Shown here in pieces: positions 1-40,985 of a stretch of DNA of 64,000 bases. Each line of letters begins with the position of its first letter. Positions within the stretch are counted from its first letter, which is position 1. Source of the stretch: Botryllus schlosseri (Eukaryota); contig CM119386.1 in the NCBI GenBank assembly GCA_051294905.1, positions 9,920,001-9,984,000 of the forward strand, read 5' to 3'. The notes beneath the pieces were generated by a model. It ran no database searches, was not told the DNA's origin, and saw only the letters and a list, made by a program, of their open reading frames with translations. Made by a program: the position numbers and the translations under genes.

Positions 1-411
1 ACAACATATTCTACTTTATATGGTCATATACGAAGATCTACGAAGTATGTGGTTGGCCCTTGGCTACGCCAATGCGTCGGAACTGGTGTTTTAGTCATCA
101 ATGTTCCACATTTCGCGGTCAGGTTAATCAAATTGTCGATTGGCCTTGCAAGTTCACAATAACTTTCCCTATTTCTCTGATAACATAACTAATTTCGATA
201 ATACCTCGCGGGTCACTCAAAACCTTCTCGTGGGCCACAGGTTGGCCGCCCCAGACCTGCACCATTGTCCGATATGCATATAAGTTATGTCATTTGAGGA
301 TTTGTGCTTCATTGTTGAGTACGAATATCGAGATAGTGGAGATTCGTAATTCGCCCGTGGCCATTTTCTTTAGACATGTTTGCCTGTAATGCCAAATGTC
401 TATTCTGACAG

Positions 412-642
412 CGAAAACATGCCCTTCCTTGTCTCATTTCGACAATCTACGCTCAATAAGATATGTCCGTGTGAACCGCTCGACACACCTTCCTGAAGAC
501 GCAAGTGAGCCGTTTTGGTATGACACCCGTGCATATCACAAATGTAAGCCGGGATACGAACCTTATCCCACTGATTTACGATTTTGTCACGGGAGGGGAG
601 GTGTGGGCGAGGGAGCGTGGACCAGGCCCGTGGTGTGTACAC
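412..642 (+). CDS. CFB: Bf-like exon: N-terminal CCP/sushi module
   Basis: TCPSLSHF...HKCKPGYEP...RFCHG...AWTRPVVCT; acceptor ctgacag, donor gtgagt; phase 1-1. Confidence 0.8.
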
Positions 643-3600
643 GTGAGTTGAATTTTCTTTATACAGCAACACTTATCGATATTGATCGAGGCACTTCAGA
701 TGTAATGACGATCAAATCAAAAAACCGAAATCGGCAAGAACATGAGTTTTATTTGCCTATTAGCGACAAATATTTACTGTTTTATGGTATGTTTTTGTCG
801 ACTTTTTACGTCGAAACTTATTCGTAATGAAATTAGGTGTTTATCGATACATTGAATATGATGTTGTAGACCAGTGGTTCTTAACCTTTTTTCTTCTAGC
901 GCCCCCTTTCAAAAATTATCGTGCTCCAGCGCCCCACCTCTTATTGTAATGACTGTAATTAAGACAATGGGTGAGAGGGATGACCGTTACAGCACTTCGT
1001 CAGCCCCCTAAAAAACGATTGTCTTGGGCACCCATAGCGTGATAAACCAAACTCATGAAGGCCTCTCCCCCAAGAACCCGTCGCGTGATTTCGATGGCCA
1101 GCAACGTTTATATGGCATGGTCGTCCTAGGAGCCAATATTTTCTATCATGCATGAATGAAATATGTTGTAATTGCATATATATGTCACTATAAACTTTTT
1201 ATTCTCTCAGCCCACGTAATCAGATTTACCAGTAGCGCTGAGTGAGCTGTTGTAATGGAAAAGGAAAGCCACGTAATTAATAATTGAACATATTCGGGCG
1301 TGCCCGTTGGTACAATTAAATCGTTACATGTTATTTTGTTACCTCCTATCCGCTATATAGTCAAAAGCTATTGAAACGCATAAACGTATTAAACTAAAGT
1401 AAGCACACGATTCGAAATTGGTATTTTTTCCCTGACAAATAATATTCTCTGATGGATGTTATTCGTCCTGTGGAGGTGCAGATTGCGACGACATGATAAT
1501 TCGACACGAGCCATTCAGTATCTATGGACAATTAGACTTATATACATCGAAGTTTACGCTCAACATAAGGGCAATCCTCTATCAAGCCATAAGGTTTTCT
1601 CGCTGACGATCTTTTTGACACACTTCTCGGAGTCCCATATTCACCGTAACTTCATATGTCTTCGTGCATCGTGGCGTGGTAATGGCCACCGCCAAAATGC
1701 CTGTTTCTATATTCCATAATTATGCGTATTCTTCCGTGAAGGAGTCGTCAAAACATGATGTTCAATTTATGTTCATTCACCGAAATAATTTAGGGCACCT
1801 TTTGAGCTAACCGATTGCGGGTTTGGGTTGCAGTTTCGGTCTTGGTAAGATGTCAAAGTTCAGTCGGTCTTTTTGAAACTTTGGTATTGGAAATATTTCG
1901 AGCTTTAATCGCGCTCGAGGACCATTCGACTATAATAAACCATGTATCAATTGTGTGTGGTATATTCGGGGTCAAATCAAGGTTGTTATAACAACAATCG
2001 GGTACGGTTTCCTCATACCCAGTGGTTCGAACCCTCCCGAATTCACATCGGCGACTGGCAATACGAGGGAATTAATGGAATTGGATTTTTGTCTTAGTGC
2101 TTGGTGTAACTATAAGTAAGTCAACTGAGAATGGGGTGCATATACCTGCTCAGTGCTCATATTGAATTTAGTACTGTACCCAGTTATTTATTTTAACATG
2201 AATGTATTCCAAACAAAGCAACTCATATTATAGGCCTACAACGTTCATGTGAGGTTGTGAACCACAACACGAGATAGTGTCATCCTTTATGATGAGATGT
2301 TCAAAGAAATATTCAGATGATTTAATTTTGTAGCTCTCAAATACAAGTATATTTAGTTATTCATTTCATGCAAAATGCTTCAAAACTTATTGTATGTACA
2401 AGGGGCTCTCACTCTCAATCAAACGTGATATACAGTGCCTCACATTCTTCGATTTTCACACGCTGTGCGCTGCGCGATATAATACCTAATTCGAAACATT
2501 TTGTTGAAAAAAAAAATTGGCGATCTAAAGGTACGCGCAATTCGTTTTATAAGAATTATAATAACCCACTACATTTAGGAAAACATATGCAGGCCTAGCA
2601 AACATAGTCGCGAATCGCGACCAAAATTTTCGGGATTGGACAGGTTTTGTGGAATGTTAATTTGTTCTGAATAGGCTACTCATTAAGGATATGTCCTACT
2701 ACCACATTATCTACGGCGAAGCCATTTTCTTCAGCGCCCCCTTATCGCCCCCCTATGCCCAGCGCCCCCCCCCCCCCCATTTCGCCCTCTGAGCGTTTGC
2801 GCACCCTTCGAAATCGCCAGCGCCCCTTTGGGGGCGCCGGAGGCAAGGTTAAGAACCACTGTTGTAGACAAATCGATTTATTTGTCGTCTGCAATATAAC
2901 ATAAAAATGCACTTGAATCAATATTACATAATCAGCTACCTGCGCCCAGAGGGACGAACAAGCTATAAAAGAATATGCACTACAATGCGGAGCTAGTTGC
3001 CTTACCTCAAAAGACTGCCCCGGATCGAAAATATGTTGGTGTGACGGAGCATGTGGTAGATCCTGCTTGAAAAAACGTAAACTAATAGCTCTATTTAGGG
3101 CTGCGTAAAAAGTGTTCAAATTGATAAGCTTTCCGTTTACCGAAGGTATATCGTGTGGTGACGCGCCATCAATTCCTCACGCTACCATCGAATACACTGG
3201 TTCAGGACGCGACAAAGTAGCGCACTACCTTTGTGACGAAGGCATGTATATCACCGAAGGAGATGTGTTCAAGAAATGTTCTGGTACGGGTCAGTGGGAA
3301 GGACGGTCTCCGCGTTGCGAACGTCAGTTGCGTATCACGTAATCTGTCGGGCTTTCAAAATATACACCCAGAACTTTTTGTATAGGTGTGGTGTGTCTGG
3401 ATCCAGGCCCTGCAATAAATTCGATGGGTGGCTTTTTAGTTACGGAGAGCACCGCGCCCTATTATTATAACTCGGTTGTAAAATTCGCATGTGGCCCGGG
3501 ACAACGTCTTCTTGGATCGAAACAGCGAACCTGTCTTTCGGACGGTACATGGAGCGGAGTGGATACGGTTTGTGACAATGAAAGTGAGTGTGACAGTACT

Positions 3601-6600
3601 ACATTGGTGCAACGTCGTTGTGATGTGATACTTGATATGGTTGGTTTCACAATTGCTACCAAGACGACGGGCTAAATATACTTGATTGGTCATGAAATGT
3701 TTAAGCAGAGAATCTTGCACCGGTCGATCATTGGCGACGCCATCAATGTGTTATCACTATGGGCAAGTTTTTGTTGCACTAAAATCGTGAGAAAGCTGCA
3801 CTTAATTTTAACAAAAGTTTCATTTAGATAATAATTCTTTAGAATTATCAGGCAATGAGATAGCCTACTCGAAAGGTCCCGCTGTATAACCCAACAGTTT
3901 AAGACTTCAGGATATTCATTCTTCGCTATTCAATCGAAAAATCGATTATGCATACACTATTATGTTCTTTAGGTCTCAAACCTGCATGACAGCATTTCGC
4001 CGTCAGCTCCCACAGAACTGTGAAAATTTGGTACTTCCCCATATCACGGACAGTCTGGCGAGATCACCTAAAATTACTTTTTCCGGTACGCAGCAAGAAA
4101 ATAACGCAATGTGGACATAATTTAGTTAGTCCATGAAAAGTCAAGTGCCATGACCCAAACTTCCTAGGCCTGCAAACTTGGCCGAAGGCATTACAGCAAA
4201 ACTCATTGTTAGCTACTTTACCTAATCAATAGCCTGAAAAAGTGACCCAGTGAAAATGTAATTTTCGGCGGTCTCGCATGGACGTCCGTGAAATAGGATA
4301 GGACCTCAAATTTGAACGACAGTGAATCAATCGCTCGAGTGATTTAGATATAGTTCATGCACTGTCGTGCTTGGCTGGGTTTGTTGCACTTCCACCTTAC
4401 AAGCCTTTGCGTCATAGATAATATTGAGCTGCATCAGTTAATCCATAACAGAGCTCTTTGTTTAGCAAATCAAAGAGAGATCCATGCGGGAAATAGTTTT
4501 GTCGCGAGTTTTTTTAATCAATCCATTACATTTTGCGCAAAAAGTTGCACTAAAAGGTTGCACGAAAAAATGGAAAATATTGCAAAAAGTTGCACTATAA
4601 ACTTCCTCCAAACAGCGTAAAACATCATGCGACATATCTTCTTAGTATTTAGGAAGTTCCCCGATAATAAAAAAAAGTTGCAAAAACTTGCCCTAGTTCA
4701 GGGTTGCCATACGTCCGGAATTTCCCGGACATGTCCCGAATTTCACTGTTCAAACTAGCGTCTCGGAGGAATTTCCAAAATATGCCAAATGTCCGGAATT
4801 TTGAAGGTTTGACGTAGGCTCGTAATTTTTTCGTAAATCAGCATAAAACAATATATTTTGGGAATATTTATGCTAATGCATGATATTTTTCTTCGCGCCG
4901 TGTGCGACTTCCTATCACATTTATTGATTTTAATATGGAGACTACCACCCTCGAAAAAACTGCAATAAAATATAAATAAAAACAACCTTCATTTACTGGA
5001 ATAAGCTTAATTGTAATCGCAATTATAGGAGAACCGTATATTTCTAGAGGCCGTTTAAATGCTTTATTCAATGATAGTGGTTCCAAACGGGGGGTCGTCG
5101 TTTGCCTTTATTCTGGGATTTGCGAATATGTTGAACGTAATCAGCTTCCAAAATAGCCCGTAAGTCTAGGCAAAGGTGCTGACTTCTTTCAGTAATCAGT
5201 TCGTCAAATTTTGATATGGGACAAGGAACATTTTCAAATTGGAGATGGAGTCGCGACCATAAAAGGTTGGAAACCACAGGATGTGGGGTGTTTATAAAGC
5301 TCCGTGGTGCGCACCCGCATAATGCTGATAAACAATGTTATCGGTAGGACATGAACATGACTTAACGATGTACAATTACGCTCCCTGTATTTTTGAACTC
5401 ATCATCCTCCACCAGCTCTACCGCTAACTCTTGTCATGTGGGCGGAGAGTAGTAGGCCTATCTATATAGTAATATATGGAACGACCAATATTATTGACAG
5501 AATCCATTCAAATACCAGATGCATATAGAAACCAGATTCATATAGCAAGCACCCCCCTGCCCCAGAAGTTGCATCGATTACCCTATAGTGTGGGCTATTT
5601 GGGCGGGAGGGGGCTGAAAACATGTGCTTTCGGTCCCGGTTACATAACCACACAGCCACGTACTCCTGAACCGGATCGTGACCACCTCTGGTCTATGAGC
5701 AAAGCTTTGTTAGTGTGACGTCATAATTCATTCAAATCCACTAGTGGGCGCTAAAGAGTGTCCGGAATTTGGGTTGCTGAAATATGGTAACCCTACCCTA
5801 GTTATCACCAAAAAATTCACCTGCGCTAATTTCGTTAGTTATTTATACATGTGAAACGGGGCAGAGATTGAGTTGCTTTGGGTTACCTTTACATAATACG
5901 TCCACTCATGGCGTTTGATATGCAATAAACCAGGGTTATCATATTTTGGAATCGGGAAAGGGGGACACTTTTTAAAAAATTTCAAACTTCGAATACAGGA
6001 GGAAAATCTTGAAGAAATGGTCAATTTTTATATTTTGGCGTCCTCGGAGGACATTTTCAAAAACCTGAAAAAGGAGGACAAATCCTCCTAGAGAAGGACG
6101 TATGGTAACTCTACAATATACATAATCTCGATACTAAACCACGATACACATTCCGCATCAAATGTTGAAAGTACAGAATCAATTCATTATAAAAAAACAG
6201 AGGTGCTCCGTAATGAAGTATGATATAGTTATACTTTTTTGGAGTATTCCAGTGGGTTTTGCCTACTTGTACTAGTTACTCAGGTGATTATGTCTTAGAG
6301 TTAGACCATAGGCACCGACTTTTATTTTTGCATGGGGTGGCGGCAGGCGCGTAGCCAGCGGGTGTCGAAACCCCCTCATTTTTTAACGCAAAACCACGTC
6401 CTTTTGAAATGACCATTCTGACTCTAATATTTAGTTGCAATTCAACAAGTCGTATTATCAGTGTTACGCGGGATCGCGACCAATTAGCGAGATTCGTCTG
6501 TGCACGCATATCCCATCGCACAATGCAACGCGACGCGATCTCCCGCTGAGAAGATTGCAGAATTAGGTCATTGATTGCCGCGCACTCAGCATTCGTCGCT

Positions 6601-9600
6601 GGACTGAGCAGTAACACGGCGCGACAATTCTGGAACACGAAAGACAGACAAGAATTATGATTACAAACGCGCGCGGTCAATCAGTATTTATCCCTTACCG
6701 CCGACACAATGGGTTTTCACTTAGTTTTGAGTTGCTCGCATCACGACTATTGGTTGTTGATTAAAACATCGATTTCGACTGCATTGCTGCATTTCCCGAT
6801 TTGCGTTCGCAAAGTATAATTGGATTAATATTATGGGCATTGGGCACTGCAATAAATTCCAACTTGCAGGCACACACAATAAAACACTGTTCAACTTTGG
6901 GCTCCGAGAATATTTATCACAAAAAATGGTTCACAAAATATTTTAAACGAGGCTTGCGGTCCTCATCGATGCAAATAATGCACTTTAATTTGTAGAAGGT
7001 GGACGCATATTTGGTCGGCAAATCGCGATAGGAGATGGTGTTTCTCAGAGTTCGCGATGAAATCTACGTTTCTAACGACGACGTCGAATTTGTACATCTA
7101 ATAAGGATCGTTAGTTTGCTTAAATCAGCATCAGTACGCTGTGCGAAATACATAATAGTGATCAATTTTTATCGGACTGTACAATCGGCCGGCAAAGTTG
7201 CGCTGATAACGAAACTGCAGACATGCCGCAAACCTGCAATAATTACAATTACAGGGTGCACTATATACCCAGATTCGGCAATGGCAACGAACACAATTTG
7301 TTAACATGCGGGCATAAGTATTAATCAAAAAGATACATAAGCACAAACAATGTTACACTCAGAGATTGTTACTGTTTCGCGAAGGTGATTCTGCGGACGG
7401 TAGCAGGCCTGCATGCGGACGCGCTAAATCAAACCACCGACGATAGTGCACATGAGATATCGATGACCCATTTCGCATGCAAATGATTCTCGCAAATTTG
7501 CAGTCCGCAGCATCGATAATAGGAATTAGTGAATTGGCATTTCAAAAGGACGGGATTTCTAGTTATAAATCAGAAACTTCCTGGCTACGCACCTGGGGTT
7601 TTTATGCCGACAACGCGCTGGTTGATATCAGCCCGTAGGCCCCGATCAGCGAGTCGAATTCGATCGTAAAATGGTGCGCTTGTAATTATCCACGTGTAAT
7701 CGCAGTGAGAGCAATATGGGCGCATGCCGCGACCTTATCAATAGAAATACATATCCCAAAGGTTTGAAATTCGATCAGCGATATGGTTGCGCTCGATTGA
7801 GTCCGTCCAGCAATGAAGTTTATTGGAACATAGAAGGTTCCCGTTCAAACTAATCGAATAAATTCGCTATTCACGCCACCGAGAATCTCGTGTTGCATCA
7901 ATTTTGACAACATTATTCAACGCCGTGCACTGCACAATGCGCAGTATTAATAACAAATCAAACACTGACAAGTGACACAGAGGGAATGCGAGTGTATATA
8001 GCAGACAAGAATTATTGTGGCCTACAGATGATAGCAAACGAGAAAGTGATATAAGTTGGCAAAGCCTTGTTAGAGTAATGAATATGCGCACTTTGCGCTA
8101 TGGAATGACTTTCAATTCGCAGGCATACACAAACACACCGTCCTATTTCGCGCTCCAAGCCTCCAATTAAAAGAGACTATCACGGAACGAACTCAAGAAT
8201 TATTTCGTAAGGGAATATAACAATATATAATATACTATATATATATAATATACAATTTAACTAACGTGAATTCGCTCGTCTGGTCGAGAGAGAAGATGGT
8301 GTTTCTCAGCGAAAGCGTGTCGAAATCGACGTCGTAAACGAGGTTGCCTCGACTGTCTGATTACTAATCACGGATTACAATTTATTAGCACTAGTTCATC
8401 GTCGCCAACGAAGCTGCGTATTAAATTATTCGCGCGCGTATTGGTTAATGGTAAATATTTGGCATTTACGCGCTATTACTCGTTAAGTGGGCGTTTAATC
8501 TTATTGTATGGGGTGGCCGCCACCCCACAAATGTGTCATGGGCGCCTATGTCTTAGACTACCTCTTCTACTTGTTTGCATCACTTGCAAGAGTAAAATTA
8601 AGAACCTCGTGAAATAGCATATTTTCAATATTTTATTTTTTTAATAGTGATCTTATTGTAGCTTTTTGTAGTGATGTTCGTCGTTGTGCGTTAGTTGCGA
8701 ACCGAACATGCATCTTTGCACTTTTGGAAGTATCGCCAACTTCGATTATTATCTGCTAAAGGTAACGAGAACCTCCGAACCGTCGAGCAAATCTGGAGTA
8801 CTGTTTCGAAATTTCATTTTTTACTCTCAATTGAAGTAGTTAATGACAGGCCTTGAAAATTGCTACTTTTACCTGTCGTTGGTAGAAATGGATAGGAACG
8901 CTGACTATTTTGACCAGCTCTGCCCTTAAAACACAATTCGCTATCATTCCGAGAAGTCCGAGTTATAAAAATGAATAATTTATAACAGTCCATTACACCA
9001 TAGCTCTATAGAGCTACTGGATGAAAAATGCTCAAGATGGTTTGACTCTCACAAACAGGTCCCGTTAAGAGGTGTCCTCATCCGGGCGTACCAATAGGCG
9101 GAAGCTTGTTGGGGCAGGGCAAAGACGAAGAATTTATGATTGGAAAAGAAATAGTATTTGCATGCAATAAGGGATTGGTGATGGTTGGCAAAAACCTGCA
9201 GGAATGCCTCTTCAACAGGCAATGGACAGGAAACGGTGCTCCAAGTTGCGTTGGTATGCTATACATTTCTATATTGATTTCTCTTTTGTTGTGGATCGTA
9301 TATTTAACATACCTATCCTTACCCTATCTCGCTAAGAGTACAGTATATATATTGGCAAGCCTTATATAATAATTTCACTGCGCTGCATTACATTACATTG
9401 CGGAAGGAAGGAAGGAAGGAAGGAAGGAAGGAGCGTAGCCTGCTTTATTTTTGTCCTTGATGTTTTTTGCGGCATACACACCGACTCATGATATATACAA
9501 TATACACACAATCCGTGCACATGCTTACCATGAGTGCATGATGATGTGCATATGCCGCAGGACAGGGGAGGTGCAGATATAGTCTTGAACGGCTTTCTAC

Positions 9601-12600: not shown

Positions 12601-15600
12601 AAACCGATCTATAGTGTAACGGGATTCAATGTCAGACGACTAATGAGTTTATTACATGTATACTTTTAGATCCTCGGTATAGCGATCGTTCTACTGATAT
12701 AATAAGAAAGTTATCCGAAAGCACCGCCAACATAAAGGAGTACGATTTCCTCCAGCTAGGAAGAGCGGTCAATATGATAAATACTAGAGGCAGGATTGAA
12801 GTATACTTTGTGATCGATTTATCCGAAAGCATGAAAGACAAACATATACAAAATCTGATCGATTTTTCAAAGGCTCTGATTAAGAGGGTGAGTCATCAAC
12901 AATTATCAACTGTGTTCATCGTTCGCATTGAGTGTTGCTTGCACTACATGATATCTGTAATAGCCTGTGACGTAATCACTAAAGTTCGAAACCTTACATT
13001 GTAATGGCATCACACTGAGCAACACGGTGGGAATACCAAGGCGCACTGAAACAAATCTATTACTGCACGAACCAAAGCACGTGAATTGAAAACGTTTACT
13101 ATTTACGTTCACAATATGGCGCAGTTCAGACATATCTATATATGTCAGCAGACGGGTTGGTATGCCCAATGCCAGTGACTTGAATACAGGTTTGCGATGC
13201 TTCAGGAAACTGAATGATCCACACTTTTCCCTATAGGAACCGGCAATATTTTCAGTCACCGTTTATGTTACGTTCACAACGTTTTCTTGAAACATCCTAT
13301 GCGAAAGTGGCGACAGACAGACAGACATTGCTTCATTGATCATTTGCTACCATCGTATAATTTTTCTTCTATTTTCCTTTTTTAACAAAACATTTTTACA
13401 GCCAGACTGTTCAGAGTCAAGTGTACCTGTTAGATGCTGATGTGATCAGACTAGATGACCTTCACGGTCTTATCGATCATTCCCATCTAATACCGAATAG
13501 GCCTATACTGTACAGCAGGGGCGGGCAACTTCTCGAGTCGGCGGGCCGGATATAGGAAAATTAAGTACTTGGCGGGCCGGATTGCTGAATCGATACAATA
13601 TTCGCCCATTTATCCACATTCCACATATACAAGGAATAAATCGCATTTAATGAATACATTTTAACGACAGTAATGTCACTTCAAAGCCATTTCTCGCCGA
13701 TAATGACGAAGACAATGTGGATTTGAGAATAGCATTGTCATACAGGCGCCGCCATGTCTGCTTCTATCTGATCAATCAACACACGGTACAATCCTCAATT
13801 AAGATTTCAAGGAGTTCGATAACCCCGGTACCCCTAATTTACCAACACATATATTCGTTAGGGTTGAGTAGGTGACGAGATAGCATCGTTGTTCAATTGT
13901 GTGGCCTGAGAAATCTCGATAATGAATTCATGCGGTCCGCGACCTCTACGAAATTTGAAAAGTGACCCGCGACCCGTTTTGAGTTGGCGACCCCTGGTAT
14001 AAGCAGTGTTTTCGTCTTACAAAAGCCTAGAAGTGTGCCGTGCTACAAGTCGGCGGTTACAGAATGAAAAATAAGAAATATCAGCCTGGTGTAATTGACC
14101 ATTGTAGTCGACAAACACCATGATTACCACAAACGACATTAGGGTTGAGTACGTCGCAAATGCCGATAATGCAAGTCTTCTCGCTTCGACGAAATTACGC
14201 GTAAGCTCCACTCTAGCACGCTGCGCATATACGTATATAATAACATGCACTATGCAGTCACTAAAATTTGACGTAAGCAAGTAGTGGGAAATCTCGGCAG
14301 ACTAGGGCCGCGGGCCACATTATCACGTAAAACGGAAAACTGTCCGCGGGCCGGACAAAATCCCTTCGCGGGCCGGATCCGGCCCGCGGGCCGTATGTTG
14401 CCCACCCCTGCTGTACAGTGTACAATACATGCATGCATATTTTCTGTACCACCATCACTGCCGTTTGTTATGTATTTTGATTGGATGAAAAATAAAGACT
14501 CTCTCTCTCTCTCTATGATTGCTATTTATTAAATCAGTATCATCTGTTTTATACGATTGCAAACCGTATTTATAGTGGCCATTTCGTCATCGCAGACGAA
14601 CAACGAGCAGACTCACAGACGAACGCTAGTGAACAATGAACTGAACATGCATTACTAATTTTATTATTCCTGTGCTTATCATCAGGAAATTGTCAATTCC
14701 ATTTCTCCAGATTAGCCGAAACGATACGGGCAATCGGTTGAGATTTGGGATCGTCGTATTCGCTACAAAGCCGTCGACTAAGTTGAATATTATGGATGAA
14801 CCACCCGCCACTCCCAAAAAAGTAATTGACATACTGGATGAAATAGTACTCGATTACAGTAAGTGAACAAATTGTTGGAGTATATTCCACGTAGGTGAGT
14901 TGATTGGCAAACCATGAGAAGGTATATGGTCTATAGTCCATCTTTATACAATATTATAGACCATATCAGTGGTTGTCAACCGCCGGTCCGTGTGGCAAAT
15001 GCCATGCCCGTCTGCAGAATATATTATAATTTTATAACTCAATTCCAAATGGTCTCCCTGTAATTAAAGAAATATATCATCAAATTTTAAATCGATTTAG
15101 TTGTTTGGAACGTATGTTGCACTATGGTGTCATAATAGGTTAAATAGACAGTTGATACTCCGCTTTGGGTGTACGTTACAACGATGCAAGTGCTGTACGA
15201 AACTGTTTAAAAGTAGCGTCGAATTCGTTGCGGACAAGTTATATCTGGAAGCTACTGAGACTCTTAAACAAACTTCGTTTTGCGCTGCAGAAGCTCCAAT
15301 AGTTCCACGTATGAATATCTAATATCAGAAAAGAAGCATTAAACGAAGTTTACGATATTACATATCAGTTGAAAGCAAACAGAGACGATGATATCAATTT
15401 TGCACTTTTCATCAGTAGACGATTTTATAAAAATGTTGTTCAAGAAAGATATTATCTTTGGGAATGGTACCGTATCGGTAATGTATCAACACCCGAATCG
15501 TGTTTTAACAAGGGAACATCCGGAAAAAAAACGGAGGAGGAACTGATATCTACAGGGCTCTAGACTATCTTTATAAAGAACACATGACAGATTCGTACAA

Positions 15601-16925
15601 AATTCATCCCCAGGACAACGTCAAAAGACATATTTTCGTCCTAACTGATGGTGAGACGTTTTCTATGTCTTGATATTATAACATATTCTTTATACCGCAT
15701 ACCATGATGTCAAATCGTCGGCACACAACAAAACCGTTTAATACGAAATATATGACCCACAATCTTTGGATTTAATCATTTTAGGTCTATAACTAGTTAT
15801 TTTGTGTCATCTCAAAACCTTCTCTCAAACACAGGCGCCAACAATGCGGGTCCGAGGCCGGTCAATGCGAAGTTCATGATCGAGCTTGAATTTTTTGAGA
15901 CAGCCATTCCAGAGGTAATATTAACATTTTTCATGAGTCAACGTTTTGATGGGTGTGACATTATAAAGAATGCGACGCCTCCATGCAACTATCCATTCGT
16001 TTCGATAGTCGTGCAATTACTCAGATAGACGTAATAAAAGCATTCCTATAAATTAGGGTTTCCATACGTCCTCTTTTAAGAGGATTTGTCCTCTTTTTTG
16101 ACTTTTTTGAATGTGTCCTCGGTGGACACCCGAATATCCTCTTTTTTGAGAACTTGTCCTCTTTTTTGAAGATTTTGGTTAAATATAGGTGAAAATTCGA
16201 CTAATACATAGGAAATCAGTACTGAGGTAACGTTCCGGCGGATATTTCGGGAGTCGAGCCGGAAAGTGGACCTTTTTTTAGTCGCCATAAGGAAAAATTT
16301 ATAGAAAACCGTAAATTCTGGCTGTGAGCCGGAAATATGACCTTTTTAAATTTTATTTTGTTTTTATTTTTAGTCAACCGACCACAAAGTCGTGACAAAT
16401 TTACCATTTTTTCCGGTCTTAACTACAGTATTGTGTCTCTGAAAATTTTGAAAAAGTGTCCTCTTTTCAGATTTCCAAAATATGGTAACCCTACTATAAA
16501 TAGCACGAGATTTTTTGACCAAACACCACGATGGTGTGCGGACTACAGGCAATACGTCATAGCCGCGGAGTTGAAATCTTGAGACACCCATCCGTAATGC
16601 GGATATTGAAGATATGCACAATTGCACATCAAATCTATTTTTCTTGGTATCGCAGTCTTCTGATATTTTGAAATAATGAAATTATTAATAAAACCGATAC
16701 TATAACGTTTAAGGACATATACTACGACCAGTTTTACAGCATAACCTCGTCCGCACAAACCAAAGACCCCGAGGCTCGACAAAAGTTAGAGGAGATAGCT
16801 TCAAAGAATGAAAACTTCGTGTATGTCGATGACTTCTACAAGCTGCATAAATATATCGACCAGGTTACGGATGTGAAGGAAGGTATATCTATTTCGGGTC
16901 ATTGCTGAGCGTTCATATATGATAC

Positions 16926-16959
<34 letters not shown>

Positions 16960-19900
16960 GAAAAACGAAAGAACAACAATCGCAGTAAGAAAGACCAAAA
17001 GTTGAATGAACCTGTGGCATAAAATTGAATAAACGATTGACATAATACTAAAATAAAGAAACTAGAAAAGTGAGGGAAAATATATAAATAGAGACAAGAT
17101 CATCTGATGACCAACCCGCTACATCTGCGCAGCAGGAGAATAGGGTCAGATGTTTTAGCGGGAGCGGGAGCGCATTGTTAGGACTTAGTCGCTCTTCCCC
17201 AGGAGGTTGTCCTCGACCTAGACCTAGGACCTAGGCGATATAAATTTAAAAAGAAGTGACCAAAAGTGCCATGCCGAAACTTTTTCAACGTAAGCAAATT
17301 TAAATAGAGGTCGGTTGTTGCTTTTTCTGAACTAAACCGCATACTTTCTATTACGTAATAGACGACCCAATGCAGATTTGACTGTAATCGACACGCGTTG
17401 TAGTAGATGTAGTATTTCTTAGATTCAGTCCACATGAATACTTTGCGGTTCACTAAACCTTTGCACATAAGAAATAATCATTTCTAACGAGATCGTGAAA
17501 TTGTTTACACGAAATATCATTGAAAATATATGATGATCGAAATTGATCCAACTAATGCTGTCTCTTTCTTTGCATCATTGTGGTTGCATCAAAGAAAAGT
17601 GCGCACAACATTGGCATTATGGGCCATAGGCCTGCTGCTAAAGTAAAATAGCGCGATGCACTGTATGTTCACTAAACATTTCTTCGGTTCTGCAATGCTG
17701 GATATATTCTGACCATTTTTCATGTGCCAGCATTTTAGAAAATGCAGTTGCATCAGTTAGGCTACATGTCGCCTTTGCACAAATTTGCACAACCCTTGGT
17801 ACTGGGCGAACAATTCAGCATCGCTGATGTCAATGTTTCTTCTCTCCCAGATAATTTACAAATGGCAAACGTTAGCCCACTCGCTGGTGTTAGACAGAAG
17901 CATCCAATCAGGAAATTTGAATTCAGCAAATGAATTGGTACATTCATTCATCATTAAGTAGTCTCTACGGAACACAATGATCGTACAATGAGGATGCATC
18001 TGACATCAACAAATCCCATTGCTATTTGTTGGAAAACCGTTTCTAAACCAGTGATTCAGCATTTTCCATGGCTACATCATGACGGAAAATACAACGTCTC
18101 GCCTAAAAGTCTTGTGAATACTATAAGCAACTAACTCGAAATGAAAAAAAGAGAACACTTGGTCATTTGTGATCGTCCTCGAAAGACCATACAATTTTCT
18201 TGAGATAAGAGGACAAGTCCTCCTATAAGACGACATATGATAGGCTTATATCCCATCCTCTTTGCTAAATTTAGGGTATGAACTAGTCTCGAGATGTAGC
18301 TTATATTTCAAACCGTAACATCTTATCAATAGAACTTATAAAAGAAATGACTGTTAAGATTATGACACTTGCGGAAAAGATGGGGAAAAGGGAAGTATCA
18401 AGCAGGAAGCTTTGTTGGGTAAAGTGCTTGCCGGGCGCACTTTAGACAGAGCGTGGCCTTGGCAAGCTTTGATATCAAGACTCGGAGAAACAGTTGACAA
18501 TGTTTGTATCGGCGTATCGCCATTTTGTTGTAATTGGGCTACTGCCTTTTTCAAATTGTGATATTGCCACAGACGTTTAGTGACGATAACCTGAAGGGTG
18601 GTGGAAGTTTAATAAACAACAAATGGGTGTTGACTGCAGCTCACCTGTTCGCCAAGGAGGTTGGCGTGGATTGGGAACACACTATTGCAGTATCTTTGGG
18701 TGAGACGTTTTCTCACATTTATTGGATAACTTCATTTGTGCCGATGATTAGTTACATCTAAACGATACTTCTGCGACGTTAACTATGCATCGCGCGTCCA
18801 TCATGGAATATGTATGGACAATTGGACATTGGATATGCGTGTCTTTATATTTTCTAAGGTACCTGAAGTACTATAGACTATAATTCATATATAACTCACA
18901 ATATATATCTATATATATATATGAATTGTCATTGGATATTCATGAAAGATCCCATGTGTAGCCTACGCAACATTTAAGTCACTTTGAAGTAAATGTACTT
19001 TTCCTGCAAACTGCAAATTGTGTCATTTGGGTAGACTTCCGTCAATATATTAGGCTACAACAACGAGGATCGCATCCCTTTCTGACGCATCAGCGAATTC
19101 GCAGACATAGTGGAGCACTGCTAAATCATTTTTTTTAATTTCTTTCATTTTAATAATAGTTAAGCCTACTATTAGCCAGAGGTGGTCAAAGTAGCCAAGA
19201 AAGCTACTCAAGTAGAAGTAGAAGTAGTGACGGAAAATATATTCAAGTACGAGTAGAAGTGCTTTTTCCATAAGCAACCTGAAACTACTTGAAGTAGAAG
19301 TAGAATTGATTGACTTCAAATCTACTCAAGTAAGTAAGTAGTTTTGAAAACAGTCTTAATTCGTTCGCTTGGGCTGTCAAGAGCTGCAAATTGAGCTATG
19401 CTGATAGTACGGAGAGCTTGATGCATCCCAGGAGGTATCAATTTTCGACAGAATAAGCATTCTTTCTCATCATGAGATGCAAATTATAGTATTGATATGA
19501 AAATGCGATACTAACCCTTTGCTTACTAGAAGACCCCGTTTTAAAGAATATCATGGTATGGTGCCCTATACCCCATATTATAAGGCTCCAAATGTTTAGG
19601 CGAAGAGCAATACGGAGAAGTTGAATCGGATGCAGTTTCAACACTTTGCGCGTTGATATACGTTAATAACAAATATTGTGGATCGTAAAATTTATATTTG
19701 ATGTAGCTTTATTTTCGGAAAATAGAGGCATTGCTGCACTTTCTTTTATGCTTCAGCATGTATGTTCTGCAGACAAAAGAACTGAAAGTAATTAGAACTA
19801 GGAATTGAAAGCGAAATACAAATACCACTTCCAAATAGCGGAAAATGTATTTCATGTCTTTTGTCCATAAAGCTTCAAAGGTGATCGGCTAAAACAGGTG

Positions 19901-22900
19901 TAACGTTCAAAAATGCCGGATTTTCCGGATTAGCTAGACATGTCATGGGCTGCTAGATTACGATATGATATGCAATTGCTAGATTGCGAAAAGGTATAGT
20001 TTCAAACGTTATGGAGGGCCATATTTACTGTGATGAAATATTTGATATGGGTGACAATGCGGTATGAGCGGAACCAAGCAATCCGGTACCTAAATTATAT
20101 ATACTGATACTTTCGTGAAACCATATTTGTCACTCCATAACTACTGTGCGCAAAGCGGAACAAAATTTATGGGCGTTTCTTGACTTTTATGAATATTAAA
20201 TGCTGGTACTCCGTGAAAACAGCCCCGAAATTCCTCAGGCTATGTTTCGTATTGGGGGATTAAATTACTTCTACTTGACAAACTGAAAATAGCGAAAAGT
20301 AAGTAAGTAGATCACAAAATATTACGAAGTAGAAGTAGAAGTAGAGAAAATCAGATATTACTTGAATAAGTACCAGAAGTAGAGGAAAACTGCTTGAGTA
20401 CTTCCAAAAAGTAGAAGTACTTCGTTACTGACCACCACGGCTATTAGCCCATGGATTTTTCAGAGTATAAATATCCGCTACCTAATGGAAATCATCCTCC
20501 CGAGAACAGGTTATTATTTAATTACTATTCCTGTCCCATGAGTCCCAGACGGAAACATAAACCGTTTCTCAGTTGAATTCAACTCAATATTTGTTCAAAG
20601 GTATTTTTCGCAGGCCTAGGTACGGCGACGGATTGGACGGATCTGTGAGAATATTTCGTCCAGAAAAGATTGTATCTCACGAACTTTATGAGCGTGATGA
20701 TGAAGGCAAGCTGATGGTTCGCTCCTTTAGACACGATATCGCCTTGGTAAGTTGTTTCCTCCACAAAAATGAAATTTGTGAAATTTAATGAAAGTGGTAG
20801 CGACTGGCGAATTTTCACTTCCTCTGTCTGGCTCCTCCGATGGGCAAAAGCTTCAATAAAGTCTGTGCAGCAGTTCTTGTATCGTGGAGGCGGTCTTTTA
20901 AACTTCCTCGATCTTGCTGTCAATGAGCCGTTTCAATCTCGACGTTTGCGGGTAATATATAGAGGCACTTTCATAACAGATAAAACTCGGTGGGGAATAC
21001 GTCATCGACGGAGATTATATTTTTGAACCCCAATTCAAACCAGGAGACGTCGGCTATCGAGGATTCGTTGACTTCACTCCTTACGTGAAACCCGTTTGTC
21101 TACCTTGCAGCAATAGTAGTTGCGTTCACGAAATATTGAGAAAGGAAGATAGCAACGGCGATATCATGATAACCGGAAATGAAACCCCCGAAAGACAATG
21201 CGAAATCGAGCGTAAGTTTGTGAACGTCGAGAGCGCACTGGACGGAGTACCATCTTTTCCCATAGATAAGCGGATAGCGCATTGATTCAAACCAATATTG
21301 TGTTACGGATATCATAATAAGATCCGAGTCCAGACGCAGAATCACGCACTCCTCCATAGGTCCGATACTGACTCAAAATGCATTCGAAATTGGCAGGAAA
21401 GTTGAATATTATGTGAAAATCCGTGTCCAATTGTAGTCTCGCAAAAAAACGCGTATTCAAGCCTGGTCAAAATCTTCAAATCCAATTCCCTATTATTATT
21501 ACGGAGCGTCATACAATACTCAGCGAGTTCTCGGGGCACCCGAAAAGACAGTGTACTAGATGAAACTGTAACTCGGATACCATATATTGCATGGTATCCG
21601 AGGTACAGTTTCATCTAGGATGGTCGTAAATAACACCCGTTTACATGTAGTACATAACACCCTTTATCGACTGTAGGCCTACTCCTTGCCATATAAGGAT
21701 AAAGTGTAGGCAGATGGATCGACTGGATTGGATAACTTAATTTTATGTAATGTATTCGTATTATTGGCCCGTGACCCGTTACCAATTTCAGATAACTACT
21801 TATTGGGTCTTGAAAACGACGGTGAAACGCCTGTTATTGCCTCGGGGTTCGGACACAACCAAACGCGTGGACGCAACGACAGAATTAAGCCAAGTACAAC
21901 GCTACAGTTGGGCGCCTTGAAAATTGAAAAAAGAGAACAGTAAGATCACCATGATTCCGTACAGCTCACATATTTTAGTATCCTATATAGCAGTTCTTCC
22001 TTTATCATCTTCAAGTCTACTACATGCACTATAACAAAAGAAAAAAATGAAAATCTAATATAAATTAAGTATAGCCAAAACAGCAATTGTCATGCCATTG
22101 CTGTTGCCCTTCCCCCCAACATATCATTGTGAATATGGGTTTTCAATAATGTTATTTCGGAAGACACTAAGCTATGCAATGTCCTATTGTTATTCAATAT
22201 ACCATGTGGCTGGCTCTTTTCAGCATCACCAAACCAAGAATTGCCGGAGCAAAAGCAAGCTCAGCCATGGCATTAACTGAATATATCATAAATATTTTAT
22301 CATGTTTTGTGCGTTGTTTTTATATCAGTTTATCATTTTAACTCTAGTGATTGCTGTATAAACCAGTTTCTATTAATTAAAAATAACATTTCCTAATTTT
22401 TTCACACATCCGGAAAAATAGGGGGCATTGATTTTTCAATATTTTCGAATAAGCCCACGATGTAAAAACGTTGGCGACCCCTGCAAATATAGCTTAGCGC
22501 ACATTGCCTGGCACAAATATTTAATAGGATCTATCTTCCTATATACAACTCGAAGGTCAGGGTTTAGTTGCAGGGTGGCGGTCGACCTCATCAATGGTCA
22601 AATGAAACGGACGCGCCGTGTGTTTTCGAAAGAGATGCTATGCGCCACCGGTATACCGGACAGGAACAGTGGGAAAATGCCAGATACATGCCAGGGCGAC
22701 AGCGGAGGTCCGGTGGTTAGAGAGGTAACAATATTCTTAAAATTGCAAACCCAACAGTAGTGCGCTATATCAGCGATCCGCCCAAAGTGATGTAGCCGTT
22801 TTTCTGGGTAACTTGCTGCTTTTGTAACAATTCCAAAGAATGATAGGCAAAATAACATAATCTTTTTAAAACTGCATCCAAGAGGTGAACATTGTCAGGG

Positions 22901-23490
22901 ATATCTATACTGTCCAGTCCATGGATACCTCAGCTCGTACGGTCTTCACCGCCGAGATTTCAGTTAGCCATGACCTACGGTAGCATATTATCTATGGAAT
23001 TGATGGCGTCGCAAATGCTACTTTTATAATAATAATATTAAACCAGCTTGACTCGTCCGCAGTTGTAGTATTCCTAGCGGCGCAAACGTGAAGAAACATA
23101 CCACTTTGCTATTTGGTCCACAAGCGACGAGACGGTCTGACTCCAGCTCAGTTGAATTGAATGTGCCTGAATTATTAAGTCACAGCAATGAAGACAATAC
23201 ACGATTTGGTCAACATATACGCATCTTTACCTGTTGGCATAAAGAGCATATTTCAATATTTTATGACATTGCATGAGTTAAGGTCAAATGTCATGCTACC
23301 ACCTTTAATGTTTTAGGTGCATGATCAGTACAAAAAGAAAAATTGCTTTGTTCAAGTCGGAATTGTGAGCTGGGGATATGGCTGCGGACTTCACACCCAC
23401 CATCAGTTCCGAAAGTTTTATTACCCAGGGTTTTATAGTGACGTCACTTCAATGATATCGTGGATCAACAACGTCACGACGAGTGATTGA
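412..23490 (+). CDS. CFB: Complement factor B/C2-like protease (CCP-WAP-like-CCP-CCP-CCP-vWA-trypsin domain); spliced, 5' end lies outside the window
   Basis: Exons with GT-AG ends and compatible phases: 412-642, 2936-3076, 3146-3322, 3386-3583, 9059-9253, 12670-12887, 14711-14858, 15513-15650, 15835-15914, 16714-16882, 18359-18501, 18573-18699, 20601-20746, 20980-21211, 21792-21939, 22568-22724, 23317-23490 (TGA). Motifs: four C-C-C-W-C sushi modules; DPRYSD linker; MIDAS DLSES/GTD/TDG; TAAH, HDIAL, GDSGGP; VSWG. The CCP-vWA-SP order is diagnostic of the Bf/C2 family; the symbol denotes the family, not 1:1 orthology. Confidence 0.9.
872..2861. mobile_element. Non-autonomous hAT-type DNA transposon in a Bf-like intron
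   Basis: TIR CAGTGGTTCTTAACC at both ends; 8-bp TSD TTGTAGAC (864-871, 2862-2869). Confidence 0.85.
2936..3076 (+). CDS. CFB: Bf-like exon: WAP/four-disulfide-core-like module
   Basis: TCAQRDEQAIKEYALQCGASCLTSKDCPGSKICWCDGACGRSCLKK with 8 Cys; acceptor atcag, donor gtaaac; phase 1-1, in frame with both neighbours. Not in the supplied ORF track. Confidence 0.8.
3146..3583 (+). CDS. CFB: Bf-like exons: CCP modules 2 and 3 (3146-3322, 3386-3583)
   Basis: SCGDAPSIPHA...YLCDEG...KCSGTGQWEGRSPRCE and VCLDPGPAINS...FACGPG...TCLSDGTWSGVDTVCD; 63-nt intron between them. Confidence 0.9.
4699..5795. mobile_element. Non-autonomous hAT-type element (AGGGTTRCCATA family)
   Basis: TIRs; 8-bp TSD CCCTAGTT (4691-4698, 5796-5803); related copy at 59295-60424. 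Confidence 0.85.
6307..8550. mobile_element. Putative non-autonomous TIR element (CATAGGCRCC ends)
   Basis: CATAGGCACC...GGCGCCTATG termini; flanks share TTAGAC (imperfect TSD). Confidence 0.45.
9059..9253 (+). CDS. CFB: Bf-like exon: CCP module 4, adjacent to vWA
   Basis: RCPHPGVPIGG...FACNKGLVMVG...ECLFNRQWTGNGAPSCV; phase 1-1. Confidence 0.9.
9402..9769 (-). mobile_element. tRNA-derived SINE with a (CCTT)n tail
   Basis: Minus strand: A-box-like TAGTGATGG, B-box GGTTCAATACC followed by CGGCCGGGCCATACCAAAGAC; 3' AATAAA then (CCTT)n. Confidence 0.7.
11558..12098. mobile_element. hAT-type MITE
   Basis: TAGGGCTGGGCA / TGCCCAACCCTA TIRs; TSD CTTACTAC vs CTTACCAC (1 mismatch); internal CTCGA repeats. 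Confidence 0.75.
12670..16882 (+). CDS. CFB: Bf-like exons: linker plus von Willebrand A domain (5 exons)
   Basis: DPRYSD...LGRAVN...VYFVIDLSES; RFGIVVFAT; GGTDIYRAL...HIFVLTDG; ANNAGPRP; EEIASKNENF. Confidence 0.9.
13328..14514 (+). mobile_element. LINE 3'-UTR copy ending AATAAAGA(CT)n, interrupted by a hAT-type insertion
   Basis: Matches the reverse complement of 44778-45060; split at 13515/14411. Confidence 0.8.
13516..14410. mobile_element. hAT (Charlie-like) non-autonomous element nested in the LINE 3' UTR
   Basis: TIR CAGGGGYGGGCAAC at both ends; 8-bp TSD CTGTACAG (13508-13515, 14411-14418). Confidence 0.85.
16056..16493. mobile_element. AGGGTT-CCATA family MITE
   Basis: TAGGGTTTCCATACGTCC...ATATGGTAACCCTA; relatives at ~5933-6112, ~55943-56260 and ~61141-61347. 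Confidence 0.65.
16926..16960. repeat. (GTT)n microsatellite
   Basis: About 11 tandem GTT units. Confidence 0.95.
18359..23490 (+). CDS. CFB: Bf-like exons: trypsin-family serine protease domain (7 exons)
   Basis: TCG...WPWQA; GGGSLINNKWVLTAAHL; HDIALIKL; VKPVCLP; ASGFG; MLCA...DTCQGDSGGP; GIVSWGYGCG...YPGFYSDV...WI. Confidence 0.92.
19177..20440. mobile_element. Non-autonomous hAT-type element with AGTAGAAGTA subterminal repeats
   Basis: CAGAGGTGGTCA...TGACCACCACGG ends; 8-bp TSD CTATTAGC; diverged second copy at 58797-60883. Confidence 0.85.
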
Positions 23491-40982: not shown

Positions 40983-40985
40983 ATT

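What the first reader, a model, noticed from the sequence alone, without database searches (positions are those of the whole stretch)
412..9253. Factor B-like protein with a WAP-type module: CCP-WAP-CCP-CCP-CCP-vWA-SP
Seen: a 141-nt phase 1-1 exon (2936-3076), in frame with both neighbouring exons, encodes 8 Cys (C..C-x3-C-x5-C-x5-C-W-C-x3-C-x3-C, including CWCDGACGRSC) between CCP1 and CCP2. Known: vertebrate Bf/C2 have 3 CCPs, and described ascidian Bfs add a CCP plus LDLRa modules rather than WAP. The C-x-CDG-x-CG spacing recalls WAP modules of WAP-CCP proteins such as nematode LEV-9 (from memory). Inference: exon shuffling placed a WAP module, a fold that includes protease inhibitors and antimicrobials, into an alternative-pathway convertase protease. 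This could be an undescribed complement variant, possibly with a built-in regulatory module.
Basis: partly seen in the sequence, partly recalled or inferred. Interest (0 to 1): 0.75.

Follow-up and report, generated by a model that had tools for sequence, protein, structure and literature searches.

The report
Sea-squirt factor B with WAP module
The exon is real and encodes a WAP-type cysteine module inside a sea-squirt complement factor B gene, but all sea-squirt factor B genes, including the Ciona ones cloned in 2005, carry the same module, so only its name (WAP of the LEV-9 kind, not LDL-receptor) looks new.

Summary
Observation confirmed. Window 2936-3076 is a 141-nt, phase 1-1, AG/GT-bounded exon. 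It encodes 46 aa with 8 Cys between CCP1 and CCP2 of an intact 17-exon factor B (Bf) gene (412-23490, + strand; the N-terminal exons lie upstream of the window).

The module is WAP-type:
- Pfam WAP scores 21.9 bits against a cut-off of 20.8.
- A profile of 23 ascidian modules hits elafin and SLPI in the PDB.
- The best AlphaFold DB match is the C. elegans LEV-9 WAP domain.
- hhalign against LEV-9/Hasp-type WAPs gives 99.1% probability; against true LDLa modules of the same proteins it gives 0.2%.

The module is not a novelty of this gene. The same module, plus a second one before CCP1, is present in every ascidian Bf retrieved: Ciona CiBf-1 and CiBf-2, Phallusia, Clavelina and Styela. In Ciona it is also a single phase 1-1 exon. 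Echinoderm and tick Bf/C2 lack it.

From memory, the 2005 Ciona paper reported these modules as "LDLR domains". Ciona Bf has no Pfam LDLa, so the architecture was already reported under another name.

The elafin-type inhibitory loop is not conserved, so a built-in inhibitor role is unsupported. The module most likely belongs to the released Ba-like N-terminal arm. This is a modest re-annotation of low to moderate interest.

The parts
412..642 (+). Exon A: CCP1, the ascidian-specific extra CCP (phase 1-1, 231 nt)
   Evidence: It has 4 Cys plus a Trp in CCP spacing and aligns to CCP1 of Clavelina, Styela and Ciona Bf. It gets no Pfam Sushi hit, so it is divergent.
867..2866 (.). About 2-kb insertion with 22-nt terminal inverted repeats inside intron 1; it ends 70 nt before exon B
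   Evidence: the repeat finder pair I1: arms 867-888 and 2845-2866, 91% complementary. The close relative P0001 has only about 100 codons between CCP1 and the module.
2936..3076 (+). Exon B: the LEV-9/Hasp-type WAP module ('WAP2'), 141 nt, phase 1-1, 8 Cys
3146..3322 (+). Exon C: CCP2 (phase 1-1)
   Evidence: Pfam Sushi 25.6 bits; splice sites.
3386..3583 (+). Exon D: CCP3 (phase 1-1)
   Evidence: Pfam Sushi 34.5 bits.
9059..9253 (+). Exon E: CCP4 (phase 1-1)
   Evidence: Pfam Sushi 32.3 bits.
12670..12887 (+). Exon F: linker with a conserved basic residue before Leu (IIRKLS, 12699-12716; possible activation cleavage site) and the start of vWA with MIDAS DLSES (12816-12830)
   Evidence: Pfam VWA on the ORF.
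14711..14858 (+). Exon G: vWA
15513..15650 (+). Exon H: vWA (MIDAS Thr in GGGTD; LTDG spans the H/I junction)
15835..15914 (+). Exon I: vWA
16714..16882 (+). Exon J: end of vWA
18359..18501 (+). Exon K: linker and start of the serine protease
   Evidence: tblastn to ascidian Bf.
18573..18699 (+). Exon L: serine protease, catalytic His (TAAHL, 18633-18647)
   Evidence: Pfam Trypsin.
20601..20746 (+). Exon M: serine protease, catalytic Asp (HDIAL, 20732-20746)
20980..21211 (+). Exon N: serine protease (ascidian-type insertion)
21792..21939 (+). Exon O: serine protease
22568..22724 (+). Exon P: serine protease, catalytic Ser (GDSGGP, 22695-22712; Ser codon AGC)
   Evidence: Pfam Trypsin.
23317..23490 (+). 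Exon Q: last serine-protease exon, including the stop codon

Best explanation
The window holds all but the 5' end of the complement factor B (Bf) gene of a stolidobranch ascidian. Exon 2936-3076 encodes the second of the two WAP-type four-disulfide modules that all ascidian Bfs carry on either side of an extra N-terminal CCP. The ascidian layout is [LDLa x0-2]-WAP1-CCP1-WAP2-CCP2-CCP3-CCP4-vWA-SP. The module belongs to the LEV-9/Hasp subtype of WAP: C-x-C in place of the CC doublet, a CDGxCGxSC signature, and a CCP directly after it. It was fixed in the ascidian ancestor as a symmetric phase 1-1 exon. How it works is inferred, not shown. It is a constitutive, rigid, disulfide-rich part of the N-terminal Ba-like arm, which precedes the conserved basic-Leu site in the CCP4-vWA linker. 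It would therefore leave with the pro-fragment when the proenzyme is activated on C3b. It most likely serves as a spacer or binding surface for the extra CCP, and not as a canonical protease inhibitor. The vWA MIDAS and the His/Asp/Ser triad are intact, so the protein is expected to be an active convertase protease.
For: Gene model: 17 GT-AG exons and one open 939-aa frame. It aligns end to end with ascidian Bf, at 50-51% identity to the Styela clava Bf-like proteins P0113 and P0035 and 33-35% to Ciona, Phallusia and Clavelina. Model residue 1 corresponds to P0035 residue 171, so the signal peptide, LDLa and WAP1 exons lie upstream of the window. MIDAS DxSxS..T..D and the catalytic H/D/S are present. 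WAP identity: Pfam WAP 21.9 bits against a cut-off of 20.8, up to 33.4 bits in the Clavelina orthologous module. A 23-module profile hits elafin (E 8e-4) and SLPI as the top PDB sequences. The AF2 model has pLDDT 86.8. Foldseek's top PDB hits are elafin, SLPI, omwaprin and nawaprin. The top AlphaFold DB Swiss-Prot hit is C. elegans LEV-9 residues 26-59, probability 1.00, TM 0.63, 2.5 A over 42 residues. hhalign against LEV-9/Hasp-type WAPs gives 99.1% probability, E 1.4e-18, over 45 of 46 residues. The ESM Atlas neighbours are WAP clusters. Conservation: the module sits at the same place in Ciona CiBf-1/-2, Phallusia, Clavelina and Styela with nine invariant columns. All position-2 modules form one clade, support 99/99. 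In the Ciona genome it is also a single phase 1-1 exon of 144 nt.
Against: There are no transcript data for this species, so inclusion of the exon is inferred from orthologs, and a phase 1-1 exon could be skipped without breaking the frame. The Pfam score is only about 1 bit above threshold. The structural matches are statistically weak (Foldseek E >= 0.09; VIA-align Z <= 2.5), as is usual for 46-residue disulfide knots. The CC doublet that is typical of WAP is interrupted by one residue. The proposed spacer/binding role and the release with a Ba-like fragment are inference only. The residue before the conserved Leu varies (RK, NK, IK, QR, RR) among ascidians. The statement that the literature calls these modules LDLR rests on my memory of Yoshizaki et al. 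2005, which the library does not hold.
Confidence: 0.8

Rival explanations
1. Built-in regulator: the WAP module acts as a protease inhibitor or antimicrobial unit inside the convertase, for example by holding the Bf protease or a neighbouring protease in check.
For: The WAP family includes elafin and SLPI, which are the closest solved structures by sequence profile. The module sits on a protease zymogen.
Against: Only the C3-C8 half aligns to elafin/SLPI (profile positions 19-45). The segment around C2, which forms the inhibitory loop in elafin, has different spacing (C1-x14-C2-x3-C3 against C1-x6-C2-x8-C3) and is predicted to hold a short helix. The closest relatives are LEV-9/Hasp WAPs, for which no inhibitor activity is known; the LEV-9 WAP is dispensable for LEV-9 function (PMC9083331). 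The module lies five domains away from the SP domain, in the part expected to be cleaved off.
Confidence: 0.08
2. Cassette or pseudo-exon: the exon is skipped, or only alternatively included, in this species, and the main protein is CCP1-CCP2-CCP3-CCP4-vWA-SP.
For: Phase 1-1 symmetry means that skipping keeps the frame. There are no transcript data here. A 2-kb transposon-like insert ends 70 nt upstream of the exon.
Against: All 8 Cys, the D and the G of the invariant core, and canonical AG/GT sites are kept. The exon is 80% identical at the protein level to a close relative's copy, in which the flanking intron has diverged and shrunk. The module is present in the cDNA-derived Ciona and Phallusia Bf and in the RefSeq models of Styela and Clavelina.
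Confidence: 0.07
3. The module is an LDL-receptor class A repeat, as ascidian Bf extra domains are labelled in the literature.
For: PMC4714745 states that ascidian Bf have an LDL_A domain. From memory, Yoshizaki 2005 reports two LDLR domains in CiBf.
Against: The module has 8 Cys where LDLa has 6, and it lacks an acidic Ca-cage motif. Pfam gives only WAP for the module even at E <= 10. Pfam Ldl_recept_a hits fall only at residues about 23-58 of the Styela and Phallusia proteins and nowhere in Ciona Bf. hhalign of the module profile against the true LDLa repeats of those same proteins gives 0.2% probability.
Confidence: 0.01

Closest known systems
Ciona intestinalis complement factor B genes CiBf-1/-2/-3 (Yoshizaki et al. 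2005, Immunogenetics 56:930; UniProt Q5H875), with Phallusia, Clavelina and Styela Bf
   Same: The domain order from CCP1 to SP is the same. The 8-Cys module sits at the same position between CCP1 and CCP2, and in Ciona it is likewise a single phase 1-1 exon. MIDAS and the catalytic triad are the same. Identity is 33-51% over the full length.
   Different: This is a different species and ortholog; its closest match is only about 51% identical. The introns are much longer (a 23-kb gene against about 12 kb in Ciona). A Trp lies between C5 and C6. The N-terminal exons are not in the window, so the presence of WAP1 and LDLa here is inferred from Styela.
LEV-9 (C. elegans) / Hasp (Drosophila) WAP-CCP synaptic matrix proteins
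   Same: The WAP subtype is the same over its whole length (C1-x12-15-C2-x3-C3-x5-C4-x5-6-C5-x-C6-D-x2-C7-G-x-S-C8) and is directly followed by a CCP. hhalign gives 99.1%. LEV-9 is the best AlphaFold DB match. The WAP1-CCP1 of Phallusia Bf aligns collinearly with an insect Hasp-like WAP-CCP1 at 35% identity.
   Different: LEV-9 and Hasp have one WAP followed only by CCPs (8 to 17), have no vWA or protease, and act in acetylcholine-receptor clustering (PMC9083331). Here the module is internal, is present twice per protein in ascidian relatives, and sits on a complement protease.
Canonical WAP inhibitors elafin and SLPI (PDB 1FLE, 2REL, 2Z7F, 4DOQ)
   Same: Eight Cys, with identical C3-x5-C4-x5-C5..C6-x3-C7-x3-C8 spacing and the DCPG..K.C / CG..C motifs. 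They are the top PDB sequence and Foldseek hits.
   Different: One residue interrupts the CC doublet. The C1-C2-C3 spacing differs, and the protease-binding loop is not conserved. The statistical support is weak (E 8e-4 by profile; Foldseek E >= 0.17).
Vertebrate factor B / C2 and other invertebrate Bf (echinoderm, tick)
   Same: The core is CCPx3-vWA-SP, with MIDAS and a trypsin-like domain.
   Different: They have no WAP-type module in any of the eight non-ascidian Bf/C2 sequences checked, and they lack the extra N-terminal CCP flanked by Cys-rich modules.

Membership tests
Complement factor B / C2 | N-terminal CCP (sushi) modules | tested here: met
   Pfam Sushi on exons C, D and E (25.6, 34.5 and 32.3 bits). 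Exon A has the CCP Cys/Trp pattern and aligns to ascidian CCP1, but gets no Pfam hit.
Complement factor B / C2 | Central vWA domain with a MIDAS motif (DxSxS ... T ... D) | tested here: met
   DLSES at 12816-12830, the Thr in GGGTD, and the Asp in LTDG. Pfam VWA hits the first vWA exon at 20.1 bits, below the cut-off for that fragment alone.
Complement factor B / C2 | C-terminal trypsin-like domain with a His/Asp/Ser triad | tested here: met
   TAAHL, HDIAL and GDSGGP; Pfam Trypsin on exons L and P.
Complement factor B / C2 | All domains in one transcript in the order CCP-vWA-SP; orthology to known Bf | tested here: met
   The 17-exon GT-AG model gives one ORF. The best matches over the full length are ascidian Bf. 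Splicing itself is inferred, not observed.
Complement factor B / C2 | Forms a C3 convertase with C3b after cleavage by a factor D/MASP-like protease | not testable with these tools
   This needs biochemistry.
WAP four-disulfide core (Pfam PF00095) | Score at or above Pfam's gathering threshold | tested here: met
   21.9 bits against 20.8, E 2.2e-4, which is marginal. Orthologous modules range from 14.7 bits (Ciona) to 33.4 bits (Clavelina).
WAP four-disulfide core (Pfam PF00095) | Eight Cys with WAP spacing, including the central CC doublet | tested here: inconclusive
   Eight Cys are present, and the C3-C8 spacing equals that of elafin, except that one residue (Trp) splits the CC doublet. The C1-C2-C3 spacing differs.
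WAP four-disulfide core (Pfam PF00095) | WAP fold and C1-C6, C2-C7, C3-C5, C4-C8 disulfides | tested here: inconclusive
   AF2 pLDDT is 86.8. The top Foldseek hits are WAP structures, but with E >= 0.17 and TM about 0.45. VIA-align Z <= 2.5 does not discriminate. The LEV-9 WAP model matches at TM 0.63. Disulfide connectivity was not obtainable.
WAP four-disulfide core (Pfam PF00095) | Elafin/SLPI-type protease-binding loop (a feature of the inhibitory members only) | tested here: not met
   The N-terminal half does not align to elafin/SLPI, and residues 7-12 are predicted to be helical.
LEV-9/Hasp-type WAP module | Full-length profile match including C1 and the CxCDxxCGxxC signature | tested here: met
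   hhalign A1 against A2: 99.1% probability, E 1.4e-18, 45 columns. LEV-9 is the top AlphaFold DB Swiss-Prot hit.
LEV-9/Hasp-type WAP module | Module directly followed by a CCP | tested here: met
   The exon C CCP begins 3 residues after C8.
LDL-receptor class A repeat | Six Cys, an acidic Ca2+-binding cluster, and a match to the Pfam Ldl_recept_a profile | tested here: not met
   There is no Pfam LDLa hit at E <= 10. hhalign against true LDLa repeats of Styela and Phallusia Bf gives 0.2%.

The most novel reading that the evidence does not exclude
The two Cys-rich modules of ascidian factor B, carried in the literature as 'LDLR' or overlooked, are LEV-9/Hasp-type WAP domains. On this reading the ascidian ancestor's Bf gene captured the 5' WAP-CCP cassette of a LEV-9/Hasp-like extracellular scaffold gene and then duplicated the WAP. 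The cassette would give the ascidian alternative-pathway protease a function that other Bf lack, such as anchoring to a matrix or surface ligand, or cis-regulation of the zymogen.
Probability: 0.2. Interest if true: 0.5.

Novelty: new member of a known kind. Interest (0 to 1): 0.3.

Why it matters
The finding does not reveal a new complement variant. It is one more ortholog of the ascidian Bf family, whose odd N-terminal extension has been known since 2000-2005. The useful residue is a correction of domain naming. The extra Cys-rich modules of ascidian Bf are LEV-9/Hasp-type WAP domains, not LDLa repeats. Recent domain surveys (PMC4714745 Table; PMC11312191) list Ciona Bf simply as CCP-vWA-SP. 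This gives comparative immunologists a concrete exon-shuffling link between a synaptic/extracellular WAP-CCP scaffold family and a complement protease. It also gives them a testable question: what the WAP-CCP-WAP arm does in the closest invertebrate relatives of vertebrates.

Tried and rejected
1. Literature.
- Ten full-text searches found no paper that names a WAP domain in any Bf.
- Several of these searches were swamped by 'transcription factor binding' and LDL-cholesterol papers.
- Yoshizaki 2005 is not held, so its 'two LDLR domains' wording is quoted from memory.

2. Homolog retrieval.
- A whole-protein word search with Phallusia Bf returned mostly unrelated CCP proteins. Restricting it to vWA+SP worked.
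- The N-terminal search with Styela Bf added little and did not retrieve Halocynthia Bf.

3. DNA of relatives.
- The DNA of the close relative's contig (P0001, SRR25569784) was unavailable, so no dN/dS or intron/exon conservation test was possible.
- Styela P0035 is not on record.

4. Structure. The VIA-align second look gave Z <= 2.5 for WAPs and for unrelated knottins alike, so it was uninformative.

5. Readings rejected.
- LDLa identity of the module is rejected.
- The coral protein P0012 has WAP, VWA and Trypsin, but in the order CCP-SP-VWA-CCPs-WAP-MAM-SP. It is a mosaic or fused model, not a Bf layout.
- The antisense ORF 2745-3176 has no family hits.
- No further WAP, LDLa or CCP exon was found in window 1-411 or in the long introns by tblastn with three ascidian Bfs.

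Full report
**Observation**

Window 2936-3076 (141 nt) is preceded by AG and followed by GTAAAC. Read in phase 1 it gives 46 residues with eight cysteines, spaced C-x14-C-x3-C-x5-C-x5-C-W-C-x3-C-x3-C. It joins in frame to the CCP exons at 412-642 and 3146-3322, which are also phase 1-1.

I extended the model through the window. It has seventeen exons, all with GT-AG introns: 412-642, 2936-3076, 3146-3322, 3386-3583, 9059-9253, 12670-12887, 14711-14858, 15513-15650, 15835-15914, 16714-16882, 18359-18501, 18573-18699, 20601-20746, 20980-21211, 21792-21939, 22568-22724 and 23317-23490. Together they give one open 939-residue frame that ends in a stop.

The domains run CCP1, the 8-Cys module, CCP2-4, a vWA domain and a trypsin-like domain. 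The vWA has an intact MIDAS (DLSES, the Thr in GGGTD, the Asp in LTDG). The trypsin-like domain has His, Asp and Ser in place. The first exon starts in phase 1, and no start codon, signal peptide or further module is found in 1-411. The 5' end of the gene therefore lies outside the window.

**What organism and gene**

The spliced protein aligns end to end with ascidian factor B. Identity is 50-51% to two Styela clava 'complement factor B-like' proteins. It is 33-35% to Ciona intestinalis complement factor B-1 and B-2 (Q5H875), Phallusia mammillata 'CiBf-3 complement factor B-3 precursor' and Clavelina lepadiformis factor B-like proteins. The window is thus from a stolidobranch sea squirt, and the gene is its Bf ortholog. 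Earlier notes on the same genome also call it a tunicate. Model residue 1 corresponds to residue 171 of Styela P0035, whose first 170 residues hold a signal peptide, two Pfam LDLa repeats and another 8-Cys module.

**What the module is**

Several independent lines place it in the WAP four-disulfide-core superfamily, and more precisely in the LEV-9/Hasp subtype.
- Pfam WAP scores 21.9 bits, just over the curated 20.8. Orthologous modules range from 14.7 bits (Ciona) to 33.4 bits (Clavelina).
- A profile of 23 ascidian modules (alignment A1, nine invariant columns) finds elafin (E 8e-4) and SLPI as the best of 177,635 PDB sequences. Only the C3-C8 half aligns.
- An AlphaFold2 model (pLDDT 86.8) has elafin, SLPI, omwaprin and nawaprin among its top Foldseek PDB hits, but without significance (E >= 0.17, TM about 0.45). 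A VIA-align second look could not separate WAPs from knottins (Z <= 2.5).
- Against AlphaFold DB Swiss-Prot the best of 550,129 entries is C. elegans LEV-9, residues 26-59: probability 1.00, TM 0.63, 2.5 A over 42 residues, 36% identity.
- WAP domains of LEV-9-like and Hasp-like proteins from a nematode, three insects and two corals share the exact signature, including the residue that splits the usual CC doublet. Profile-profile comparison with them gives 99.1% probability, E 1.4e-18, over 45 of 46 residues.
- The same profile compared with the true LDLa repeats of the Styela and Phallusia Bf proteins gives 0.2%.
- ESM Atlas neighbours are WAP clusters; this is a lead only.

LEV-9 (one WAP plus eight CCPs) and Hasp (one WAP followed by up to 17 CCPs) are described in PMC9083331, which also notes that the LEV-9 WAP is dispensable for receptor clustering.

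**How widespread it is**

The module is not a peculiarity of this gene.
- phmmer of the 46 residues against 1.84 billion representatives finds a close relative's copy (80% identity) and then the collinear module of Clavelina and Phallusia Bf.
- A pattern scan and alignment show the same module between CCP1 and CCP2 in Ciona CiBf-1 and CiBf-2, Phallusia, Clavelina and three Styela proteins.
- The full-length models also have a second module of the same type N-terminal to CCP1.
- In a tree of 29 modules, all position-2 modules, including the window's, form one clade (99/99). The position-1 modules fall with the LEV-9/Hasp WAPs.
- In the Ciona genome (locus L001) the position-2 module is one phase 1-1 exon of 144 nt, and the position-1 module is also one phase 1-1 exon.
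- Eight non-ascidian Bf/C2 proteins (two sea stars, five ticks and one unnamed 989-aa entry (P0096) from a run assembly) have no such module.
- Related modules also head other ascidian CCP-serine proteases.

The arrangement [LDLa]-WAP-CCP-WAP-CCPx3-vWA-SP therefore dates to the ascidian ancestor.

**What is already known**

Ascidian Bf has been known since 2000-2005 to carry extra N-terminal domains. From memory, Yoshizaki et al. 2005 describe CiBf as having 'two LDLR domains and one SCR' added to the usual set; that paper is not in the library.

Ciona Bf has no Pfam LDLa at all. Between its signal peptide and CCP2 it has only the two WAP-type modules and one CCP. Those 'LDLR domains' can therefore only be these modules.

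PMC4714745 lists Ciona FB-1 to FB-3 as '4 CCP, no additional domain' and Halocynthia FB as having LDL_A, and states that ascidians have LDL_A. PMC11312191 (2024) summarises all BFs as CCP-VWA-Tryp_SPc. No paper in the library links WAP with factor B.

Automatic annotation already hints at the link. The precomputed Pfam domains for Clavelina XP_076821631 include PF00095, and NCBI names a truncated Clavelina model 'protein lev-9-like'.

The architecture is thus already reported and sits in databases. What appears unpublished is its correct name and the LEV-9/Hasp connection.

**How it probably works**

What is shown: the module is an independently folding, eight-Cys unit, conserved for the whole ascidian radiation, lying between the extra CCP and the three canonical CCPs.

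What is inferred: it belongs to the Ba-like N-terminal arm. A conserved basic residue followed by Leu (IIRKLS here) lies in the CCP4-vWA linker, where vertebrate FB is cleaved. The WAP modules would therefore leave with the pro-fragment.

A canonical inhibitor role is unlikely. The elafin/SLPI binding-loop region has different spacing, does not align, and is predicted to hold a short helix. The closest relatives are non-inhibitor scaffold proteins. I therefore favour a spacer or ligand-binding role for the WAP-CCP-WAP arm.

The collinear 35% match of Phallusia WAP1-CCP1 with an insect Hasp-like WAP-CCP1 is compatible with capture of a whole WAP-CCP cassette, but CCPs are too generic to prove it.

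**Limits**

- There is no transcript evidence for this species.
- The DNA of the closest relative's contig was unavailable.
- The N-terminus is outside the window.
- Disulfide connectivity is not available from the model.
- The key 2005 paper could not be read.

Noticed in passing
window 867-2866: Intron 1 of the Bf gene holds an element of about 2 kb bounded by 22-nt inverted repeats (TAGACCAGTGGTTCTTAACCTT and its complement). A close relative's copy of the gene has only about 300 nt of intron here, so this looks like a recent DNA-transposon or MITE-like insertion.
   Followed up: partly
window 18633-18647 and 22695-22712: The Bf protease domain has no Cys before the catalytic His (no histidine-loop disulfide), and its active-site Ser uses an AGC codon. 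This agrees with the separate first-stage note s1-240602. The ascidian relatives share the missing Cys.
   Followed up: partly
L001:3001-3165 (Ciona intestinalis AP043579.1): The RefSeq model 'complement factor B-1' (P0036, 975 aa) starts at an ATG that overlaps the acceptor site of the WAP1 exon (ATGCTTTATACAG|GT). Its first residues are probably intronic, and the real signal-peptide exon is missing from the model; PMC4714745 lists the cDNA-derived FB-1 as 999 aa.
   Followed up: partly
P0002, P0006, P0008, P0114, P0115 (Clavelina lepadiformis): Several Clavelina gene models of 1,360-1,920 aa are read-through fusions of a complete Bf-like unit with a second WAP-CCP... unit. This points to tandem Bf-like genes that are merged by the annotation.
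   Followed up: no
P0049, P0059 (Ciona), P0032 (Phallusia), P0033 (Styela), P0041: The same LEV-9-type WAP module heads other ascidian CCP-serine proteases that lack a vWA domain and are named 'limulus clotting factor C-like' or 'TMPRSS9-like'. The module has therefore spread within ascidian CCP-protease genes.
   Followed up: partly
window 40363-43917, minus strand: Retrotransposon ORFs with RT/RNase H, an integrase zinc-binding domain and an integrase core (Pfam).
   Followed up: partly
window 27325-29139, plus strand: A 605-codon ORF without any Pfam match. The first-stage note s1-240574 calls it a collapsed BEL gag-pol.
   Followed up: no
window about 50800-58300, plus strand: Exons of a ubiquitin-specific protease gene: the end of a UCH domain at 52913-53215 and DUSP-like pieces at 56304-56756 and 57896-58300.
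   Followed up: no
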